From positions 10,788,001-10,852,000 of the forward strand of contig NC_043004.1 in the NCBI RefSeq assembly GCF_006345805.1: 64,000 nt of DNA, written 5' to 3'. The number at the start of each line of letters is the position of its first letter. Positions within the stretch are counted from its first letter, which is position 1. This DNA is from Octopus sinensis (Eukaryota). Below, one piece after another: positions 1,628-60,858 of this stretch. The position numbers and the translations under genes are program-made. A model generated the notes under the pieces. That model was not told the DNA's origin, did not search any database, and saw only the letters and a program-made list of their open reading frames with translations.

Positions 1628-1867
1628 TTACTCTTTTACTTGTTTAAATCATTTGACTGTGGCCATGCTGGAGCAGTGCCTTTAGTCGAGCAAATAGACT
1701 CCAGGACTTATTCTTTGTAAGCCTAGTACTTATTAAATCGGTTTCTTTTGCCGAACCGCTAAGTTACGGCTACGTAAACACAGAAGCATCGGTTGTCAAG
1801 CGATATTGAAGCGACAAACACAGAAACACAAACATATGCACACGCACACACGCACACACACACACAC

Positions 1868-1904
<37 letters not shown>

Positions 1905-2070
1905 TATACATATATACGATGGGCTTCTTTCAGTTTCCGTCTACCAAATCCACTCACAAGGCTTTGATCATCCCAAGGCTATAGTAGAAGACACTCGCCC
2001 AAAGTGCCACGCAGTGGGACTGAACCCGGAACCATGTGGTTGGTAAGCAACCTACTTACCACACAGCCTC
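1628..2070 (-). mobile_element. SINE family A (tRNA head + internal TA/CA tract + conserved tail)
   Basis: Reverse complement of TGGCTGTGTGGTAAG...GGGTTCAGTCCCACTGCGTGG...GCAGTCAAATGACTGAAACAAGTAAAAGAG. Confidence 0.9.
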
Positions 2071-2994
2071 TCTCTCTTTTTCTCTCCCCTTCTTTACATT
2101 CTCCCTCTTCTTCTTTCTCTTCACGTGAAAGCGTTACTGACGGCCTAAGTAACGCAATGACTAGCAGAATCATAAGATTATTGTTGTTGTTACTTATAGT
2201 AGTGATGGTGGTGGTGAAAGAATTGATGCTAGTTGTGGAAGTAGAAGTGCTATAAACTCCTGCTTAACAATAATAAATTATGTTAATTTCTTATGGTAAA
2301 TACAATTGCTTATATGAAAAGTATTATCTTAATGTTTTAACAGAATACAAATCTGATTTCGGTATCTTGACGATATTAACAACACATTCCATAAGACACA
2401 ATCTTTTTGTCGATCGTCGTAGTTCTGTGTAATCACAGCTGTATATTGAATTGTTTATTGAAAACAATATGTCTCCAGATTGTCTTCTACCATTCCTTAC
2501 GTAAGAGGAAAATCATAAACAGACAAAAAAAAATTAACGACTATAATATTTTGTAATCCGATTTCTTCTGTCGTTGATCAGATATCGTTTGTTTCTAAAG
2601 AATTCAACAAAGTTAGAATAAAGTAATTTTCTTGAAGACGTTCGTGATGCGTTAAAGTGAACCTTTGCCTTTTATAATCGTATTTCCAATTAAAGCAAAA
2701 TGTAAAAAAAAACCCCAAAAAAACCAGAAAAGAAAAACGCAAAACGTAATTTCGCACAATGGTAAAAAAAGTGCAATTATAAAATACATTACGATATAAC
2801 ACAATAAAGTATTACAATAGAGCATGTAATAATATAGAATTATAGTACTAATATTATGATATTTAATACTATAGTGCTAATATCATAATATATAAAACTA
2901 TAGTCATGTAGTACGAGAGTAAATACATTAAAAACAAGAACACAGGAAGTTGCCTTCAGTGAAGCACATAAAATCTCAATCAATGGGGAAACGA

Positions 2995-18980: not shown

Positions 18981-19296
18981 GGGCAAAGATAAAACCTAAC
19001 AACTAAAAACATTTGCACGGCAATCTTCGACATCACGTGATTAGACACTTGCCGTGAAGAAAGCAATACACGTTTCCTCTAACAGAAGATAATGGCGGAA
19101 GTAGTGCGAAAAATATAAGTCACATTTTCTGAATTTAGCACTCTAGTGTCGAACGACACTTGCATAAAATTGTTCGCTACAGGAAAATAAAAGACACAAT
19201 GGTCACAGGTGGAATGTCCTAGTGCAATGTTTACACGTTCAGAACTATTCTTGTTGGAAAATATCAACATTATCATTATCATTAATTATTTACATT

Positions 19297-19746
19297 ACGC
19301 AGGAGTGGCTGTGTGGTAAGTAGCTTGCTAACGAACCACATGTTTCCGGGTTCAGTCCCACTGCGTGGCATCTTGGGCAAGTGTCTTCTGCTATAGCCTC
19401 GGGCCGACCAAAGCCTTGTGAGTGGATTTGGTAGACGGAAACTGAAAGAAGCCCGTCGTATATATGTATGTATATATATATATGTATATATATATATATA
19501 CATATATATATATGCGTGTGCGTGTATATTTGTGTGTTTGTGTTTGTCCCCCAAGCATTGCTTGACAACCGATGCTGGTGTGTTTATGTCCCCGTTACTT
19601 AGCGGTTCGGCAAAAGAGACCGATAGAATAAGTACTGGGCTTACAAAGAATAAGTCCCGGGGTCGAGTTGCTCGACTAAAGGCGGTGCTCCAGCATGGCC
19701 GCAGTCAACTAACTGAAACAAGTAAAAGAGTAAAAGAGTAAAAGAG
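19297..19746 (+). mobile_element. SINE-A, full length, flanked by ATTATTTACATT direct repeat
   Basis: The 12 bp duplication sits at 19285-19296 and 19748-19759. Confidence 0.9.
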
Positions 19747-19976
19747 TATTATTTACATTCGACGGACATTGGTACTCACCTTGTTTGTGAGCATATGGCG
19801 TAGTGGTTAAGAACGCGGGCTACTAACCCCAATGTTTCGAGTTTGATTCCAAGCAATGACCTGAACAACAACATCAACAGCAACAACAACAACAACAACA
19901 ACAACAGCAACAACAACAACAACAGCAACAACAGCAACAACAATAATAATAATAACAACATCGAAAAATACCTTAG

Positions 19977-19999
19977 ACTTACGGCCATATATTGATAGC

Positions 20000-20030
<31 letters not shown>

Positions 20031-20093
20031 AACATCGAGCCTAGTTAGCACTTAGATGGGTGACCACTTGGGAAACCTAGGTGGTGTAAGCAT
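19977..20093 (+). pseudogene. 5S rRNA-derived copy (near full length, diverged)
   Basis: ACTTACGGCCATAT...GGTTCTCGTCCGATCACCGAAGTTAAGCAACATCGAGCCTAGTTAGCACTTAGATGGGTGACCACTTGGGAAACCTAGGTGGTGTAAGC matches the animal 5S consensus, including box A/IE/box C region. It has a small deletion near the 5' end, is a single copy and lies inside a SINE. Confidence 0.9.
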
Positions 20094-20107
20094 TCCATTA
20101 CATTATA

Positions 20108-20270
20108 GGCGCAGGTGTGGCTGTGTGGTAAGTAGCTTGCTTACCAACCACATGGTTCTGGGGTCAGTCCCACTGCGTGGCACCTTGGGCAGGTGTCTTC
20201 TACCATAGCCTCGGGCCGACCAAACACTTGTGAGTGGATTTGGTAGACGGAAACAGAAAGAAACCCGTCG

Positions 20271-20312
<42 letters not shown>

Positions 20313-20315
20313 CGT

Positions 20316-20354
<39 letters not shown>

Positions 20355-20568
20355 TGTGTCTGAATTTGTCCCCCCAACATCGCTTGACAACCGATGCTGG
20401 TGTGTTTACATCACCGTAACTTAGCGGTTCGGTAAAACAGACCGGTAGAATAAGTACTAGGCTTACAAAGAATAAGTTCTGGGGTCGATTTGCTCGACTA
20501 AAGGCGGTGCTCCAGCATGGCCGCAGTCAAATGACTGAAACAAATAAAAAAGTAAAAGAGTAAAAGAG
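20108..20568 (+). mobile_element. SINE-A, full length, immediately downstream of 5S copy
   Basis: GGCGCAGGTGTGGCTGTGTGG...GTAAAAGAG. Confidence 0.9.
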
Positions 20569-20603
20569 TTAGGAATGAGAACCCAGGTTCGAAATTTCCC
20601 CAA

Positions 20604-24061: not shown

Positions 24062-24470
24062 GGTGTAGGATTGACGGTGTGGTAAGTAGGTTGCTTACGA
24101 ATCACATGGTTCCGGGTTCAGTCCCAGTGCGTGGCAACTTGGGCAGATGTCTTCTACTATAGCCTCGGGCCGACCAAAGCCTTGTGAGTGGATTTGGTAG
24201 ATGGAAACTGAAAGAAGCCCGTCGTATATATGTATATATATATGTATGTGTGTGTGTATATGTTTGTGTGTCTGTGTCCCCCCCCCAACATCGCTTGACA
24301 ACCGATGCTGGTGTGTTTACGTCCCCGTAACTTAGCGGTTCGGCAAAATAGACCGATAGAATAAGTACTAGGCTTACAAAGAATAAGTCCTGGAGTCGAT
24401 TTGCTCGACTAAAGGCGGTGCTCCAGCATGGCCACAGCCAAATGACTGAAACAAGTAAATGGGTAAAAGT
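24061..24470 (+). mobile_element. SINE-A, full length
   Basis: Head, TA/TG tract and tail homologous to the other copies. Confidence 0.9.
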
Positions 24471-25099: not shown

Positions 25100-25680
25100 T
25101 AAGCAAAAAGCACGGCATTTTGAAGTGTGCTGGATGGTCTTTCTGCGAAACACCAACGATCATTTTCTTGACCGAATAGACACTTGTGACGAAAAGTGGA
25201 TCCTTTAGGATAACCGTAACCGATCAGTTCAATGGCTTGACGGTGATGAGTCCCCCAAACATTTCCCAAAGCCAAAGTTATATTAGCAAAAGATTATGGT
25301 GACTGTCTGGTGGTCTGCAATTGGTGTTGTCCAATTGGTGTTCTGCAGTTGGTGTTGTCCAGCTTTCTGCAAGCTAATCAGAGCATTACAGCAGAAGTTT
25401 TCTGCAATCAACTCGCTGAAATGCACGCTCACTTGCAAAAAATGAGACCTGCGTTGGTGAGTCGGCGTGGTCTAATTCTACTCCACGATAATGCAAAGCT
25501 ACATATTGCAAGAATGACGCTACAGAAACTCACAGACTTGGGATATGAGACTTTACCTCATCTTCCATATTATCTTGATCTTTCACCCACTGCCTACCCT
25601 TTTTTTAAGCATTAAAACACGTTTTTAATTGAGAAAACTTTTAGTGGAATCGGCTTTCAAATATTTCTTAGCAACAAATG
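25100..25680 (+). pseudogene. Mariner transposase catalytic-domain fragment
   Basis: FLDRIDTCDEKWIL*DNR, VTVWWSAIG, LLHDNAKLH, LPHLPYYLDLSPTAYPFFKH; multiple stops. Confidence 0.9.
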
Positions 25681-27569: not shown

Positions 27570-27731
27570 GGCGTGGGAGTGGCTGTGTGGTAAGAAACTT
27601 GCTTACGAACCACATGGTTCCGGGTTCAGTCCTGCTGTGTGGCATCTTGGGCAAGTGTCTTCTACTATAGCCTCGGGCCGACCAAAGCCTTGTGAGTGGA
27701 TTTGGTAGACGGAAAGTGAAAGAAGCCCGTC

Positions 27732-27765
<34 letters not shown>

Positions 27766-27989
27766 GTGTGTGTGTATATGTTTGTGTGTCCGTGTCCCTC
27801 TAGCATCGCTTGACAACCAATGCTGGTGATTTTACGTCCACGTAACTGAGCAGTTCGACAAAAGAACCAATACAATAAGTACTAGGCTTACAAAGAATAT
27901 GTCCTGAGGGCGATTTGCTCGACTAAAGGCGGTGCTCCAGCATGGCCGCAGTCAAATGGCTGAAACAAGTAAAAAAGTAAAAAAAGTAC
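27570..27989 (+). mobile_element. SINE-A, full length
   Basis: Head, TA/TG tract and tail homologous to the other copies. Confidence 0.9.
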
Positions 27990-51782: not shown

Positions 51783-51890
51783 TCTTCGTCTTCTTTTTCT
51801 TCTATCCCGTACAAAATATTGCAAAACAGTGCTAGAGAATTAAGAAGGTTTATGTTCCTATAAACTCTGTTAATTCTGTAACCCTTTAAA

Positions 51891-52910
51891 ATGGAAGATA
51901 AGAAAGTTCGTTTTCGGCACTTGATGCTTTTCTTTTTCCACAAAAGGAAAAATGCCGCACAAGAAACGAAAGAAATATGTGCAGTTTACGGTGATGTTTC
52001 TTTATCTGAAAGAGCTATACGGAAGCGGTTCGCTAGGTATCGAGCTAGAGATTGTAGCCTTATTGATAAAGAACGATCAAGCAGACCATCCACTACAGAT
52101 GATGACCAAATCAAGTCATTAATTGAGAATAACCCACATTGCACAACCCGAGAATTGGCAGAAAGCCTCAACCTATCAAAATCCGTCGTTCATGAGCACC
52201 TGGTAAGGCTTGGGTACACAAATCGCTACGATGTTTGGGTACCACATGAGTTGAGTGAGAAGAACCTTTTAGATCGCATTTCCATCTGTGATTCGCTTTA
52301 TAAACGGAATTAAAACGCGCCTTTTTAAAAGCAAAGGTGATGAGAAATGGATTATCTTCAGAAATGTTCATAGAAAGTGATCCTGGACTAAGCGACATGA
52401 GCTACTCTTAGCCACCCCAAATGCAGGTCTTCACCCTAAAAGAGTCTTGCTTTGTGTCTGGTGGGATTGGAAAGGAATTCTGTACTGAGCTTTTTTCCAA
52501 ATAACCAAACAATTAATTCTGAGAAATACTGCACACAACTGGACGAGTTAAAAAAAGCAATTCAAGAGAAACGTCCAGAGTTGGGCAACAGGAATGGGTG
52601 TTGTTTTCCAACATGATAATGCAAGACTGCACGTTTCTTTGGGAACCAGACACACCTTGCTGCAGCTCGGCTGGGATGTGCCACCCCACCTTCCATATTC
52701 ACCAGATATTGCTCCTTCGGATTTTCACTTATTCAGGTCTCTGCGGAATAGTCTTAATGGTAAAAATTTCAATTCCTTGGATGACGTAAAAAGATACTTT
52801 GATGAATTATTTGCCATGAAACCACATCAATTCTGGGAAGAGGGTATTTTCAAGTTAAAGAAAGTGATGGAGATGCATCGCGCAACAAAATGGTTCATAT
52901 TTGGTTGATT
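51891..52910 (+). pseudogene. Mariner (DD34D) transposase pseudogene, near full length
   Basis: N-terminal HTH region (MEDKKVRFRHLMLFFF...), WVPHEL motif, GDEKW, VWWDWKG, HDNA...YSPDIAPSDFHLF with 34 residues between the last two Ds. It has stops and frameshifts, and TIRs are not evident. Confidence 0.95.
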
Positions 52911-53690: not shown

Positions 53691-53734
53691 AGACACAGAG
53701 AATCACGCACATACAATTTACAAATATATGTATA

Positions 53735-53946
53735 CTCTTTTACTCTTTTAATTTTTTCAGTCATTTGACTGTGGTCATGCTGGGGCACCGCCTTTAGTCG
53801 AGTAAATCGACCCCAGGATTTATTCTTTGTAAGCCTAGTACTTATTCTAGCCTTTCTTTTGCCGAACCGCTAAGTTACGTGAACGTAAACAGACCAGCAT
53901 CGGTTGTCAAGTAATGTTGGGGGGACAAACATAGACACGCAAACAC

Positions 53947-53990
<44 letters not shown>

Positions 53991-54170
53991 ATATAATATA
54001 TATATATGCATATATATACGACGGGCTTCTTTCAGTTCCGTCTTCCAAATCACTCACAAGGCTTTGGTCGGCCCGAGGCTATAGTAGAAGACACTTGCCC
54101 AATGTGCCACGCAGTGGAACTGAACCCGGAACCATGTGCTTGGTAAGCAAGCTACTTACCACACAGCCAC
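53735..54170 (-). mobile_element. SINE-A, full length
   Basis: Reverse-complement homology to family A. Confidence 0.9.
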
Positions 54171-55447: not shown

Positions 55448-55491
<44 letters not shown>

Positions 55492-56777
55492 GGATCACGT
55501 GACCGACCAGACCATCAGATGATGTTACACATCGCTGGTCACAATGCGTTCGCATTGTTTTAGCCTTCGAATGACGCCACCCCGCTGGCTAAGCGAGCAG
55601 GCATATATATAATATATATATATATATATATAGATATATATATATATATATATAATATATATATATATATGTATTATATATATATATACACATATACATA
55701 TAAATACATACATACATACAGACATATAAAGATATATATATATATAATTTATATATATATATATATATATAATATATAATTACTATATATACATATATAT
55801 GGGTTTATACATTTGTTATGATGATGCATGAAGACGTACATATACAATATATACATACACACACACACACACTCCACACACACACACACATATATTATAT
55901 ATATATATATAGATACATAACACACACAGTGTGTTAACCTGAGGATTTATATACAACAGTAAATTTATCAATAACGTTCACATGTATACATATTAGTATA
56001 ATATAAACAGATAAAACATGCGCACACAAGCAAGAACATACACTCACACATCTATATATATACAAACACACACACATACACTGACAAGAACACGCATCCA
56101 CGTACAAGAACCCCCTACCTCCCTTGTAGAATAATGAATATCCCGAGAAAAGTAAACGAAAGACAAACACAATATCAGCAGAAAGTTTCCTGAATGAGAG
56201 AGAAAAAAAAAACGCGCCAAAAACTAAATAAATACAAAAATATAAAATAAATGAAACTAAAACAGCAAGAACCAATAAAGCTTGTGCTCCAATTTCTATA
56301 GGTGTAGGTTAGTGTGTCAGTATATTGTTTTACCTTGACTTCAGAGACTAGTTATTCCTGATATTGACTTATTACAGAGCTTGTAAGCACAACTATGCCA
56401 ACGCATTGTTCATAGTATTTTAAATGCCGATCACTTTCTATTGCATGTTTACCTTAAAGCGGTTCAGAAAGACGGGGAGGTGGATGTAGTTTGATAGATA
56501 GATAGATAGATAGACAGAAATAAATAGATGAACAGAAAGTTAGATAGAGAGATAAAGATAGTATGAGAGAGACAGACAAACTGGAAGCAAAGGTGGAAGG
56601 TGATTTTGAGCAAAAGAGAGAAAGTGTAAAATGGTGAGAGAGCGAGGGAGTATTTACTAAAGTCAAAGTCAATACAAATGTATCTGCAGATTCTTCGATG
56701 TGTATGTATATACATTTTGTGTGTGTGTGTGTATGATCAAAATATATGCATATGTGTATGTGTGTGTGCATATATAC

Positions 56778-56819
56778 GCTGCATTGAAAAGGGGCAATAC
56801 CCCGAAACGCGTCTGTAGC
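56778..56819 (+). ncRNA. Type I hammerhead ribozyme motif, U3:A8 core variant (array copy 1)
   Basis: Stem I GCTGCA/TGTAGC; core TTGAAAA; stem II GGGG-CAATA-CCCC; GAAA; stem III palindrome ACGCGT; GTC cleavage triplet ending at 56813. Confidence 0.8.
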
Positions 56820-57120
56820 TGCCGGCCAAGTAGTGTGGAGCGACTGACCTCCCTTGTTCAAAGGTTATATGGATACAGTTTGTGTATCAAATAGCTAACT
56901 TAAGGCGATGGCCTCATGGAGCTAATAAGCGGTCAGCTTTTTTCTTATTTTTATAAGAATGCCATATTAGTATGCGATAACTAATATATTTCCGGGAACG
57001 CTGCCGTTGTTCTCTTTTAGAGAGACTTAGTATTTTATATTTCTATTATTGAAAACAAGTGGATGTATCCACCGAAGCTAGGTAAATAAAACCTTTGAAC
57101 AGAGATTGTCGGAAGCGACA

Positions 57121-57192
57121 CCTACTGGTTTGGCTACGCTGCATTGAAAAGGGGCAATACCCCGAAACGCGTCTGTAGCTGCCGGCCAAGTA
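57121..57192 (+). ncRNA. Type I hammerhead motif with extended stem I (array copy 2, intact)
   Basis: Same core at 57138-57179, predicted cleavage after 57173. Distal stem I is CTACT-GGTTTGGC-(TAC bulge) pairing with (T)-GCCGGCC-A-AGTAG. Confidence 0.8.
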
Positions 57193-57848
57193 GTGTGGAG
57201 CGACTGACCTCCCTGTTCAAAGTATATGGATACAGTTTGTGTATCAATAGCTAACTTAAGGCGTGGCCTCATGGAGCTAATAAGCGGTCAGCTTTTTTCT
57301 TATTTTTATAAGAATGCCATATTAGTATGGCGATAACTAATATTTTCCGGGAACGCTGCCGTTGTTCTCTTTTAGAGAGACTTAGTAATTTTAATATTCT
57401 ATTATTGAAAACAAGTGGATGTATTCCACCGAAGCTAGAGTAAATAAAACCTTTGAACAGAGATTGTCGGAAGCGACACCTACTGGTTTGGCTACGCTGC
57501 ATTGAAAAGGACCAATACCCGAAACGCGTCTGTAGCTGTCGGCCAATAGTGTGGAGCGACTGACCTCCCTTGTTCAACGGTTTATGGATACAGTTGTGTA
57601 TCAAATAGCTAACTTAAGCGATGGCCTCATGGAGCTAATAAGCGGTCAGCTTTTTTCTTATTTTTATAAGAATGCCATATAGTATGGCGATACTAATATT
57701 TTCCGGGAACGCTGCCGTTGTTCTCTTTTAGAGAGACTTAGTAATTTTAATATTTCTATTATGACACAAGTGGATGTATTCCACCGAAGATAGGTAAATT
57801 AAAACTTTGAACAGAGATTGTCGGAAGCGACACCTACTGGTTTGCTAC

Positions 57849-57890
57849 GCTGCATTGAAAAGGGGCAATACCCCGAAACGCGTCTGTAGC
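57849..57890 (+). ncRNA. Type I hammerhead motif (array copy 4, intact core)
   Basis: GCTGCA TTGAAAA GGGG CAATA CCCC GAAA CGCGTC TGTAGC; predicted cleavage after 57884. Confidence 0.78.
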
Positions 57891-58919
57891 TGGGCCGGCC
57901 AAGTAGTGGGAGCGACTGACCTCTACTTGTTCAAAGGTTAATGGATACAGTTTTGGTATCAAATAGCTAACTTAAGGCGATGGCCTCATGGAGCAATAAG
58001 CGGTCAGTTTTTCTATTTTATAAGAATGCCAATTAGTATGGCATGCAACTAATATTTTCCGGGAACGCTGCCGTTGTTCTCTTTTAGAGAGACTTAGTAA
58101 TTTTAATATTTATTATTGAAAACAAGTGGATGTATTCCACCGAGCTAGGTAAATAAAACCTTGAACAGAGATTGTCGGAAGCGACCACCTACTGGTTTGG
58201 CTACGCGCATTGAAAAGGGGCAATACCCCGAACGCGTCTGTAGTGCCGGCCAAGTAGTGTGTGGAGCGAGGACCTCCTGTTCAAAGGTTTATGGATACTG
58301 TTGTGTATCAAATAGCTAACTTAAGGCGATGGCCACATGGAGCAATAAGCGGTCAGCTTTTTCTTCTTTTTATAAGAATGCCATATTAGTATGGCGATAA
58401 CTAATATTTTCCGGGAACGCTTGCCGTTGTTCTCTTTTAGAGAGACTTAGTAATTTTAATATTTCTATTATTGAAAACAAGTGGATGTATTCCCCCGAAG
58501 CTAGGTAAATACAACTTTGAACAGAGATTGTCGGAAGCGACACCTACTGGTTTTTGGCTACGCTGCATTGAAAAGGGGCAATACCCCGAAACGCGGTCTG
58601 TAGCTGCCGGCCAAGTAGTGTGGAGCGACTGACCTCCCTTGTTCAAAGGTTATATGGATACTTTTGTGTATTAAATAGCAACTTAAGGCGATGGCCTCAT
58701 GGCGTAATAAGCGGTCAGCTTTTTTTCTTTTTTTATAAGAATGCCATATTAGTATGGCGATAACTAATATTTTCGGGAACGCTGCCGTTGTTCTCTTTTA
58801 GAGAGACTTAGTAATTTTAATATTTCTATTATTGAAAACAAGTGGATGTATTCCACCGAAGTAGGTAAATAAAACCTTTGAACAGAGATTGTCGGAAGCG
58901 ACACTACTGGTTTGGCTAC

Positions 58920-58961
58920 GCTGCATTGAAAAGGGGCAATACCCCGAAACGCGTCTGTAGC
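58920..58961 (+). ncRNA. Type I hammerhead motif (array copy 7, intact)
   Basis: Identical motif, predicted cleavage after 58955. Copies 3 (57496), 5 (58205) and 6 (58562) have small indels or substitutions in stem II, GAAA or stem III. Confidence 0.78.
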
Positions 58962-59222
58962 TGCCGGCCAAGTAGTGTGGAGCGACTGACTCCCTTGTTC
59001 AAAGGTTATATGGTACTGTTTGTGTATCAAATAGCTAACTTAAGGCGATGGCCTTGGAGATAAGCGGTCAGCTTTTTTCTTATTTTTATAAGAATCCAAT
59101 TAGTATGGCGATAACTAATATTTTCCGGGAACGCTGCCGTTGTTCTCTTTTAGAGAGACTTAGTAATTTTAATATTTCTATTATATATATTATATATATA
59201 CATATGACACACATTGTCTCTC

Positions 59223-59268
<46 letters not shown>

Positions 59269-59454
59269 GCAAGATGCATAAAATATGTACATGTATATGA
59301 AGGGAGGAGTGAATGAGAATTAGAGTGGGAGGTTGATAAGTGCTATTCATGGAATTCGCAGTCCTTGAGGTACCTTTTGTAACTTTCTGCCAATAGAAAA
59401 TATAGAATACAAATATGTATGCAATAACATGCATGCATACATACATACATACAT

Positions 59455-59850
59455 ACATACATACATACATACATCTTGCAGCTGCATCCTCGGCACACGA
59501 GAAAAGCCATTGCCAAGAAGACTTACTGAAATGATTCATGATTGTCGCCATGTGATGCCCTTATATGACTTTTAAGCCCGGCCAAGCTTTTACACTTTTT
59601 ATTACATACTAGACAATTGTGCTAGCAGGTAGGAGAAACAGGTGCCACCATATCCACTCTCTTGACATGTCTTTTTAGACCTCCAACTGAGAGGCACACC
59701 GTTCCACATTTTGCACATTTTCTATTATGAATTTTAATAGCCACATCATTGTTTATCATGGGTCGATTTCTATGAGAATTTTGATGGCTCACCAGGCCTG
59801 CACAACTCAAACACCTCCGCCCACAAACCACACACATAAAAAGGAACACT
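59455..59850 (-). mobile_element. LINE (RTE-type) 3' end with three C2H2-like fingers and (ATGT)n tail
   Basis: CVVCGRRCLSCAGLVSHQNSH, CAKCGTVCLSVGGLKRHVKR and a third stop-containing finger (..KSLAGLKSHIRASH), then a short UTR and simple-repeat tail. Confidence 0.6.
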
Positions 59851-60790: not shown

Positions 60791-60797
60791 ACCACAA

Positions 60798-60858
<61 letters not shown>

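What the first reader, a model, noticed from the sequence alone, without database searches (positions are those of the whole stretch)
56775..59184. Tandem retrozyme-like array: ~357 bp units each carrying a type I hammerhead ribozyme
Seen in sequence: 6.75 head-to-tail units in a (TA)n tract. Each has GCTGCA-TTGAAAA-GGGG(CAATA)CCCC-GAAA-CGCGTC^TGTAGC. Predicted GUC cleavage sites fall after 56813, 57173, 57530, 57884, 58238, 58598 and 58955, i.e. 354-360 nt apart. No real ORF is present. Established: animal non-LTR retrozymes are tandem arrays of 150-400 bp units with one type I hammerhead per unit. Their oligomeric transcripts self-cleave to monomers that circularise, and they are thought to be mobilised by Penelope-like elements. 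Inference: this is such an element, producing a ~357 nt circRNA starting UGUAGC. I do not recall a cephalopod family of this sequence, but cannot verify novelty. Caveat: most inter-copy differences are 1 bp indels, which may be long-read errors.
Basis: partly seen in the sequence, partly recalled or inferred. Interest (0 to 1): 0.93.

Follow-up and report, generated by a model that had tools for sequence, protein, structure and literature searches.

The report
Tandem hammerhead-ribozyme retrozyme array
This is a 2.4-kb array of about 357-bp non-coding repeats, each carrying a self-cleaving hammerhead ribozyme motif; it is a well-formed but ordinary example of the animal "retrozyme" class of small circular-RNA mobile elements, notable only for a rare compensated change in the ribozyme core.

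Summary
Window 56775-59184 is a head-to-tail array of 6.8 units of 354-360 bp, and a GUC|UGUAGC junction lies exactly at each of the seven predicted positions.

Each unit carries one plus-strand type I hammerhead. Helix I is 6 bp, helix II is 4 bp, and helix III is a single A-U pair capped by the palindromic loop CGCG. A UAC bulge and a CAAUA loop II match the Schistosoma Sm1-type ribozyme. Against that ribozyme, 9 of 10 helix pairs differ on both sides and all still pair.

A full descriptor hits only inside the array, never elsewhere in the window and never in 300 shuffled windows.

- The core is UUGAAAA, not CUGANGA. This U3-A8 replacement of C3-G8 is a documented natural covariation.
- No Rfam hammerhead model scores the motif.
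- The 1-bp helix III implies cleavage as a dimer.
- Only 4 of 7 copies are intact.

Unit size, low GC (41 %), lack of coding capacity, a strongly self-paired circular fold and insertion in a TA-rich microsatellite all fit metazoan non-LTR retrozymes. Cleavage, circularisation, expression, Penelope-like mobilisation and the "cephalopod" host could not be tested. Verdict: a new member of a known kind, of moderate to low interest.

The parts
56775..59184 (+). Whole tandem array: 39-nt 5' partial unit, six full units and a 229-nt 3' partial unit
   Evidence: TRF period 356, 6.8 copies. Unit alignment. blastn of the consensus finds no copies elsewhere in the window.
56778..56819 (+). Hammerhead copy 1, intact. 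Predicted cleavage after 56813.
   Evidence: Exact consensus motif. Passes the full descriptor with a palindromic loop III.
56814..57173 (+). Unit 1 (360 nt), bounded by two intact ribozymes. This is the best candidate for release as a monomer and circularisation.
   Evidence: Circular fold -112.5 kcal/mol, z = -4.7.
57138..57179 (+). Hammerhead copy 2, intact. Helix I 57138-57143 / 57174-57179, core 57144-57150, helix II 57151-57154 / 57160-57163, GAAA 57164-57167, loop III CGCG 57168-57171, U16.1-C17 57172-57173. Predicted cleavage after 57173.
   Evidence: Aligned element by element with the Schistosoma-derived N79 ribozyme.
57496..57536 (+). Hammerhead copy 3, lesioned. Helix II reads GGAC...CCC (two substitutions and one deletion). 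Site after 57530.
   Evidence: Fails the descriptor.
57849..57890 (+). Hammerhead copy 4, intact. Predicted cleavage after 57884.
58205..58244 (+). Hammerhead copy 5, lesioned. A U is lost from the helix I 5' strand, the core GAAA reads GAA, and the helix I 3' strand reads TGTAGT. Site after 58238.
   Evidence: Fails the descriptor.
58562..58604 (+). Hammerhead copy 6, mildly lesioned. Loop III reads CGCGG, so it is no longer palindromic. Site after 58598.
   Evidence: Passes the descriptor only without the palindrome condition.
58920..58961 (+). Hammerhead copy 7, intact. Predicted cleavage after 58955.
56721..56774 (.). Left flank: (TG)n followed by a TA-rich microsatellite ending ...GCATATA. 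The junction shares TAC with the unit consensus.
   Evidence: Sequence read directly.
59185..59258 (.). Right flank: ATATATTATATATATAC, then (CA)n-like sequence and (TC)21. ATATAT abuts both ends of the array, but this cannot be called a target-site duplication in such low-complexity sequence.

Best explanation
The array is a genomic copy of a metazoan non-LTR retrozyme, a non-coding and non-autonomous retroelement made of head-to-tail units of about 357 bp. Each unit encodes one plus-strand type I hammerhead ribozyme.

Proposed mechanism:
1. The array is transcribed as an oligomer.
2. Helix III of a single motif is only one A-U pair closed by the palindromic loop CGCG. Two ribozymes on the same transcript therefore pair their ACGCGU segments into a 6-bp helix III, forming a 'double hammerhead'.
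3. Each ribozyme cleaves after the C of GUC. [quoted passage not shown]
4. A host RtcB-type tRNA ligase closes the monomers into highly base-paired circles. As monomers with a 1-bp helix III, the circles are poor substrates for re-cleavage.
5. A reverse transcriptase, most likely from a Penelope-like element, copies the circle round and round into multimeric cDNA. This cDNA inserts at a nick in a TA-rich microsatellite and gives an array whose ends fall at arbitrary points of the unit.

Shown here: the array, the motif and its non-random nature, its architecture shared with the Schistosoma Sm1-type ribozyme, the in silico dimer and circular folds, the absence of coding capacity, and the microsatellite context.

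Inferred: transcription, cleavage by the U3-A8 core, ligation, reverse transcription and the identity of the autonomous partner.

The confidence of 0.8 is for the identity of the element as a retrozyme-class array with a genuine type I hammerhead. I would put about 0.55 on this locus or family being catalytically active and producing circles in vivo.
For: Array and junctions.

Motif specificity: 5 descriptor hits in the array, 0 elsewhere and 0 in 300 shuffled windows. A minimal-hammerhead descriptor gives the same result, with an expected count of 0.000.

Core: U4, G5, A6, A9, G12, A13, A14, A15.1-U16.1, C17 and G10.1-C11.1 are all canonical, read directly against the consensus stated in PMC7151607. 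Positions 3 and 8 changed together from C-G to U-A. This is a natural covariation reported for hammerheads of Schistosoma Penelope-like elements (PMC4209133).

Architecture: helix I of 6 bp, helix II of 4 bp, and helix III of 1 bp with a 4-nt palindromic loop. This is the 'canonical metazoan type I' layout of PMC4209133 and of axolotl HHR_Amex1, which cleaves efficiently only as a dimer (PMC7229834).

Comparison with the printed N79/Sm1 ribozyme (PMC12550524): the UAC bulge, loop II (CAAAUA vs CAAUA) and GAAACGCG..UC are conserved. Nine of 10 pairs in helices I and II changed on both sides, and all 10 still pair.

Dimer: cofolding two 52-nt motifs gives the double hammerhead at -40.7 kcal/mol, against 2 x -17.3 for separate monomers.

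Circle: -113.6 kcal/mol, 62 % paired, z = -5.8.

Other class features:
- GC is 41 %.
- No ORF has a homologue.
- There is no ribozyme on the minus strand.
- Two consecutive complete motifs satisfy the working 'active retrozyme' criterion of the 2026 preprint, and 6.75 units is typical, since 75 % of families have at most 7 units.
- Penelope-like elements insert preferentially into (TA)n and leave no discernible target-site duplication (PMC8557442).
- The hammerhead region varies about half as much as the rest of the unit: 0.027 vs 0.055 differences per cell, Fisher p = 0.024.
Against: - No Rfam 15 hammerhead model scores the motif at gathering threshold, at E<=10 on the array, or at E<=10 on a 76-nt query.
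- Two core positions depart from the consensus. PLE-type minimal hammerheads, the class in which the U3-A8 variant was found, cleaved only weakly in vitro (PMC4209133), and I found no activity measurement for a U3-A8 core itself.
- Three of seven copies are damaged as assembled.
- There is no compensatory change among the copies: 0 of 103 pairs. No relatives were found in the viral, metagenome or protein collections. Conservation therefore rests on one cross-species comparison.
- The window holds no reverse transcriptase, GIY-YIG domain or PLE-type minimal hammerhead.
- There is no expression evidence of any kind.
Confidence: 0.8

Rival explanations
1. The array is a dead relic. It descends from a genuine retrozyme, but it is no longer transcribed, or its U3-A8 ribozymes no longer cleave. 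It now behaves as an ordinary small satellite maintained by unequal crossing-over.
For: Three of seven ribozymes carry disabling or weakening lesions. Copies differ from the consensus at about 5 % of positions. The core is non-consensus and is not recognised by Rfam. PLE-type minimal hammerheads had low activity in vitro (PMC4209133). The window holds no autonomous partner.
Against: Four copies are identical to each other and to the consensus across all 42 nt, including two adjacent ones. The ribozyme region varies about half as much as the rest of the unit. Many differences are singleton 1-bp deletions, which may be long-read errors and not real decay.
Confidence: 0.2
2. The array is not an independent retrozyme. 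It is a run of tandem pseudo-LTRs left by a Penelope-like element whose coding region was lost or never inserted here.
For: Penelope-like elements carry type I hammerheads in their pseudo-LTRs, insert in partial tandems and prefer (TA)n (PMC4209133; PMC8557442). Xenopus retrozymes are sister to PLE pseudo-LTRs (preprint 10.64898/2026.07.22.740005). The U3-A8 core was first seen in PLE hammerheads.
Against: The array has 6.75 uniform units with no trace of reverse transcriptase or GIY-YIG sequence inside it or within the 64-kb window. The ribozyme is of the canonical kind, with a helix I bulge and loop II elements, and not the minimal PLE kind that lacks tertiary contacts (PMC7761336). In practice this rival merges with the main explanation, since retrozymes are thought to derive from pseudo-LTRs.
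Confidence: 0.07
3. The array is an ordinary tandem repeat in which a hammerhead-like string occurs by chance, with no ribozyme ancestry.
For: No Rfam hit. The descriptor was written after seeing the sequence and had to allow a non-consensus core.
Against: The descriptor has 0 hits in 300 shuffled windows and 0 hits outside the array. The element-by-element correspondence with the Schistosoma-type ribozyme includes the unpaired bulge and loop II, which no descriptor required. The two core deviations are exactly the pair that forms a Watson-Crick contact, and they changed in a compensatory way.
Confidence: 0.02

Closest known systems
Metazoan non-LTR retrozymes (Cervera & de la Pena 2020, PMC7229834), in particular the Mytilus galloprovincialis repeats of 350-390 bp and the axolotl Rtz_331 / HHR_Amex1 family
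   Same: Tandem head-to-tail units of 150-450 bp. One type I hammerhead per unit. No LTR and no coding capacity. GC below 45 %. A highly self-paired predicted circle. As in HHR_Amex1, helix III is a single base pair capped by a palindromic tetraloop, which implies dimeric cleavage.
   Different: The unit sequence has no detectable similarity to anything I could search. The ribozyme core carries U3-A8 in place of C3-G8. Expression, cleavage and circularisation were shown for those families and are not shown here.
Schistosoma mansoni Sm-alpha / Sm1 type I hammerhead, compared through its engineered derivative N79 (sequence printed in PMC12550524)
   Same: The order and size of every element match: outer helix, UAC bulge, 6-bp helix I, 7-nt core strand, 4-bp helix II closed by G10.1-C11.1, A-rich loop II (CAAAUA vs CAAUA), then GAAA-CGCG...UC and the cleavage site.
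   Different: Nine of 10 helix pairs differ, all compensated. Core positions 3, 7 and 8 differ (C, U, G against U, A, A). The 3' side of the helix I internal loop is one U here against four nucleotides in N79. Helix III of N79 was artificially lengthened.
Minimal hammerheads of Penelope-like elements (Cervera & de la Pena 2014, PMC4209133)
   Same: This is the only place where I found the U3-A8 core covariation documented (about 1,300 hits in S. mansoni). They also share palindromic helix III positions, the dimeric mode of action and the link with retroelements that target microsatellites.
   Different: PLE hammerheads are minimal. They lack helix III and loop-loop contacts, have a longer helix II with a bulged base, and sit in the pseudo-LTRs of an element encoding RT and GIY-YIG. 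Here the ribozyme is of the canonical kind and no such ORF is present.
Newt and salamander satellite 2 hammerheads (Epstein & Gall 1987; Forster et al. 1988, as cited in PMC6155905)
   Same: A tandem satellite of about 330 bp transcribed into self-cleaving RNAs. The short helix III makes the ribozyme active only as a double hammerhead.
   Different: The host lineage and sequence differ, and the newt core is the consensus one. That last point is recalled from general knowledge and was not checked here.

Membership tests
Metazoan non-LTR retrozyme | Head-to-tail tandem repeats with units of about 150-450 bp | tested here: met
   Period 356, 6.8 copies, units of 354-360 bp.
Metazoan non-LTR retrozyme | One type I hammerhead motif per unit, all on the same strand, with at least two consecutive complete motifs | tested here: met
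   Seven motifs on the plus strand and none on the minus strand. Four are intact, including the adjacent pair at 56778-56819 and 57138-57179. Criterion taken from the 2026 preprint.
Metazoan non-LTR retrozyme | Non-coding, without LTRs | tested here: met
   The longest ORF is 111 aa, and the consensus frame has no homologues. The flanks are microsatellites, not direct repeats, and the window has no other copy. PBS and PPT motifs were not searched for specifically.
Metazoan non-LTR retrozyme | Low GC content (below about 45-50 %) | tested here: met
   Array 41.2 %, consensus 40.9 %, window 36.4 %.
Metazoan non-LTR retrozyme | The monomer folds as a stable, highly self-paired circle | tested here: met
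   Circular MFE -113.6 kcal/mol, 62 % paired, z = -5.8 for the consensus and -4.0 to -4.7 for single units. This is in silico only.
Metazoan non-LTR retrozyme | Transcribed, self-cleaved and accumulated as circular RNA | not testable with these tools
   No transcriptome or host genome data were reachable. Scans of the public collections found no relatives.
Metazoan non-LTR retrozyme | Co-occurrence with Penelope-like elements in the same genome | not testable with these tools
   Only 64 kb is available. Within it there is no RT, no GIY-YIG and no PLE-type minimal hammerhead, but a 64-kb window cannot test a genome-wide property.
Hammerhead ribozyme, canonical metazoan type I | Invariant core nucleotides U4, G5, A6, A9, G12, A13, A14, the A15.1-U16.1 pair and H17 | tested here: met
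   All are present in the consensus and in 4-5 of the 7 copies. Consensus as stated in PMC7151607.
Hammerhead ribozyme, canonical metazoan type I | C3 and G8, which form a Watson-Crick pair in the active fold | tested here: inconclusive
   The identities are not met: U3 and A8 in all seven copies. The ability to pair is kept, and U3-A8 is a reported natural covariation (PMC4209133). Its catalytic competence in this context is untested.
Hammerhead ribozyme, canonical metazoan type I | Three helices in type I topology: helix I about 6 bp and open, helix II about 4 bp closed by G10.1-C11.1, helix III 1-2 bp with a 2-4 nt palindromic loop | tested here: met
   GCUGCA/UGUAGC, GGGG/CCCC, and A-CGCG-U. 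Definition from PMC4209133.
Hammerhead ribozyme, canonical metazoan type I | Helix I bulge and loop II elements that make the tertiary contact | tested here: met
   The UAC bulge and loop II (CAAUA) align with UAC and CAAAUA of the Sm1-derived N79 ribozyme. That these nucleotides make the contact is from general knowledge of the Schistosoma structure and was not modelled here.
Hammerhead ribozyme, canonical metazoan type I | Recognised by the curated Rfam hammerhead covariance models | tested here: not met
   No hit at gathering threshold or at E<=10, even on a 76-nt query. This is an operational test, not a defining property. The likely causes are the 1-bp helix III and the two core changes. 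I could not run a positive control.
Hammerhead ribozyme, canonical metazoan type I | Site-specific self-cleavage 3' of H17 | not testable with these tools
   This needs an in vitro transcription and cleavage assay.
Penelope-like element (autonomous) | An ORF with reverse transcriptase and GIY-YIG endonuclease domains between pseudo-LTRs | tested here: not met
   Stop-to-stop frames of at least 90 aa across the window contain no such domain. Only Mos1/mariner fragments were found.

The most novel reading that the evidence does not exclude
This may be a previously undescribed retrozyme family whose canonical type I hammerhead, equipped for tertiary contacts, runs on a U3-A8 core pair in place of the near-universal C3-G8. 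If it cleaves efficiently as a dimer, it would be a natural proof that the 3-8 pair needs only Watson-Crick geometry.
Probability: 0.3. Interest if true: 0.45.

Novelty: new member of a known kind. Interest (0 to 1): 0.35.

Why it matters
Retrozymes are an abundant, ribozyme-dependent source of small circular RNAs in animals. Their unit sequences are species-specific, so each new family adds a data point on their spread and on their link to Penelope-like elements.

The one feature beyond routine is the compensated U3-A8 core inside an otherwise canonical type I hammerhead. This gives a ready-made natural experiment on the C3-G8 contact. It also shows that Rfam-based annotation misses such elements entirely, so retrozymes of this kind are probably under-counted in genome annotations. 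Beyond that, the locus is an ordinary example of a described class.

Tried and rejected
1. Rfam at gathering threshold on the window, at E<=10 on the array, and at E<=10 on one 76-nt motif gave no hammerhead or other ribozyme hit. The few weak hits (mir-297, SCARNA7 and others) fall on flanking microsatellites and are noise.

2. Exact-pattern scans of viral contigs and metagenome contigs gave nothing. A looser structural pattern gave 5 metagenome matches. These lack helix I pairing, a palindromic loop III, a tandem context and any similarity to the unit, so they are chance matches.

3. The 117-codon minus-strand frame of the consensus was used as bait to find spurious ORF calls on related repeats in other assemblies. 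There were no hits.

4. Host identification through the best coding remnant, a Mos1/mariner N-terminus, gave hits 60-80 % identical to insect and crustacean copies. These are uninformative, so 'cephalopod' stays unverified.

5. Covariation among the six full units showed 0 compensatory pairs of 103. The copies are too similar for the test to be informative.

6. A target-site duplication cannot be called. ATATAT abuts both ends, but this is meaningless in a TA-rich microsatellite.

7. PLE-type minimal hammerheads and RT or GIY-YIG domains were searched for elsewhere in the window and none was found.

8. Lunse et al. 2017 (PMC5785218), which assayed PLE hammerhead variants, is not held in the library. 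I found no paper reporting kinetics for a U3-A8 core.

9. A coding role for the minus-strand frame was considered and rejected. It has no homologues, is broken by indels in most copies, and the unit length is not a multiple of three.
Full report
**1. The observation**

Tandem Repeats Finder reports a single array at 56775-59184 with period 356, 6.8 copies, 92 % matches and 5 % indels. The units are 360, 357, 354, 354, 360 and 357 nt, preceded by a 39-nt partial unit and followed by a 229-nt partial unit.

The 42-nt string GCTGCA-TTGAAAA-GGGG-CAATA-CCCC-GAAA-CGCG-TC|TGTAGC is exact in four copies (sites 56813, 57173, 57884, 58955). Three copies are lesioned:
- 57530: helix II is damaged.
- 58238: a helix I base and one A of GAAA are lost.
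- 58598: loop III has an extra G.

blastn of the unit consensus finds no further copy or fragment in the 64-kb window. Relative to the consensus, the copies carry 57 substitutions, 53 deletions and 14 insertions, and 88 of 99 variable columns are singletons. Substitutions are about as frequent as indels, however, so not all variation is artefact.

**2. Is it a hammerhead?**

Rfam says no. No hammerhead model, and no other ribozyme, is reported at gathering threshold on the window, at E<=10 on the array, or at E<=10 on a single 76-nt motif. I count this as real evidence against a textbook hammerhead.

The reason is visible in the sequence. The 5' core strand reads UUGAAAA where the consensus is C3-U4-G5-A6-N7-G8-A9 (consensus as stated in PMC7151607). 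In addition, helix III is a single A15.1-U16.1 pair closing the loop CGCG.

All other conserved positions are canonical: U4, G5, A6, A9, G10.1-C11.1, G12, A13, A14, A15.1-U16.1 and C17. The two deviating positions, 3 and 8, are the two that pair with each other, and they changed together from C-G to U-A. This covariation has been reported as a natural variant in hammerheads of Schistosoma Penelope-like elements, with about 1,300 hits (PMC4209133).

The same paper defines the 'canonical' metazoan type I hammerhead as helix I of 6 bp, helix II of 4 bp, and helix III of 1-2 bp capped by a 2-4 nt palindromic loop. That is exactly the layout here. The axolotl HHR_Amex1 ribozyme has the same single-pair helix III with a palindromic tetraloop (PMC7229834).

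**3. Chance**

I wrote a descriptor requiring:
- helix I of 6 nt with at least 5 pairs;
- a C..G or U..A core;
- a helix II of 4-6 bp closed by G-C;
- GAAA;
- 2-10 nt of helix III;
- UH.

It hits five times in the array, four of them with a palindromic loop III. It hits nowhere else on either strand, and never in 300 dinucleotide-preserving shuffles of the window. A minimal-hammerhead descriptor gives the same picture.

**4. Comparison with a known ribozyme**

The N79 ribozyme is derived from the Schistosoma mansoni Sm1 hammerhead, and its sequence is printed in PMC12550524. MAFFT places it in register with the array motif. Element by element:
- The UAC bulge 5' of helix I, loop II (CAAAUA vs CAAUA), G10.1-C11.1 and GAAA-CGCG...UC are conserved.
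- All six pairs of helix I and three of the four pairs of helix II differ on both sides, and all ten still pair.

Conserved unpaired elements combined with compensated helices are the signature of a real, homologous RNA architecture. No descriptor of mine required the bulge or loop II.

Among the array's own copies there is no compensatory change, 0 of 103 predicted pairs. This is expected at about 95 % identity and is uninformative. The hammerhead region does vary about half as much as the rest of the unit: 0.027 vs 0.055 differences per cell, p = 0.024. That signal is weak.

**5. Folding**

- A 134-nt segment around one motif folds at -60.2 kcal/mol (z = -6.5), with helices I and II formed.
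- Two 52-nt motifs cofold into a double hammerhead in which ACGCGU forms a 6-bp intermolecular helix III. The energy is -40.7 kcal/mol, against 2 x -17.3 for separate monomers.
- The unit folded as a circle gives -113.6 kcal/mol, 62 % paired, z = -5.8, with helix I continuing into a long imperfect rod. This matches the 'highly self-paired' circles described for retrozymes (PMC7229834; PMC7761336).

**6. Context**

- The array has 41 % GC in a 36 % GC window.
- Its longest ORF is 111 aa on the minus strand. The 117-codon consensus frame has no homologue among 5.8 billion proteins.
- The flanks are TA-rich microsatellite between (TG)n, (CA)n and (TC)n runs.
- Penelope-like elements of several clades insert preferentially into (TA)n, which usually hides their target-site duplications (PMC8557442). 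The ATATAT on both sides here is compatible with that but proves nothing.
- The array ends fall inside the unit (consensus positions about 324 and about 237), not at cleavage sites. This is what rolling reverse transcription of a circle, or later unequal exchange, would give. That reading is inference.
- The window has no reverse transcriptase, GIY-YIG domain or PLE-type minimal hammerhead. Only Mos1/mariner remnants were found.

**7. Classification**

All sequence-testable features of metazoan non-LTR retrozymes are met: tandem units of 150-450 bp, one type I hammerhead per unit, no LTRs or coding capacity, low GC and a self-paired circle (PMC7229834). The working criterion of at least two consecutive complete motifs is also met (preprint 10.64898/2026.07.22.740005). 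In that survey 75 % of families have at most seven units, so 6.75 units is typical.

I could not test self-cleavage, circularisation, expression, genome-wide copy number or co-occurrence with Penelope-like elements.

**8. Host and relatives**

- Nothing related was found in the viral or metagenome contig collections.
- The mariner remnant matches insect and crustacean copies at 60-80 % identity, which does not place the host.
- The paper library holds no report of hammerheads or retrozymes in cephalopods. The 2026 survey covered vertebrates plus four invertebrates and does not mention molluscs.

**9. Verdict**

The locus is a structurally complete non-LTR retrozyme array, probably a new sequence family of a known class. 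The only feature beyond routine is the compensated U3-A8 core in an otherwise canonical type I hammerhead, together with the fact that Rfam misses it.

Such species-specific tandem hammerhead repeats are described as widespread across invertebrate phyla (PMC7229834). I score it 0.35.

Noticed in passing
window 19977-20092 (+), with context 19748-20097: Full-length 5S rRNA match (78.8 bits, E = 4.6e-15). It is preceded by a tRNA-like stretch that ARAGORN does not call and by an (AAC)n run. The whole segment lies between two direct copies of the 450-bp dispersed repeat. It could be a 5S gene, a pseudogene or part of a composite SINE-like element.
   Followed up: partly
window 1628-2072(-), 19290-19747(+), 20098-20569(+), 24067-24469(+), 27576-27982(+), 53733-54170(-), plus split copies near 8.4-9.3 kb, 16.0-16.6 kb, 38.3-39.0 kb and 62.5-63.3 kb: A dispersed repeat of about 450 bp with an internal (TA)n microsatellite, in at least ten copies or fragments at about 83-92 % identity. 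Several copies are interrupted at the internal TA tract. It is probably a SINE-like or MITE-like family of the host. It does not flank the retrozyme array.
   Followed up: partly
window 51882-52310 and 52552-52905 (+); 25250-25612 (+): Degraded Mos1/mariner-type transposase remnants (HTH_48 at E = 1.6e-12; a weak Transposase_1 match). The closest database proteins come from ants, bees and an amphipod at 60-80 % identity.
   Followed up: partly
window 55603-55800, 55457-55489, 59217-59258, 59427-59474, 60793-60858 and many others: The window is very rich in microsatellites, including (AT)101, (TA)16, (TC)21, (ACAT)12 and (CA)n. It has low GC (36 %), no ORF of 200 aa or more, and no Pfam domain other than the mariner fragments. 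It looks like gene-poor intergenic or intronic animal DNA.
   Followed up: no
window 56704-56770 (+): Weak Rfam match to mir-297 (31.8 bits against a gathering score of 90) on the (TG)n/(TA)n microsatellite just left of the array. It is a low-complexity artefact, not a microRNA.
   Followed up: no
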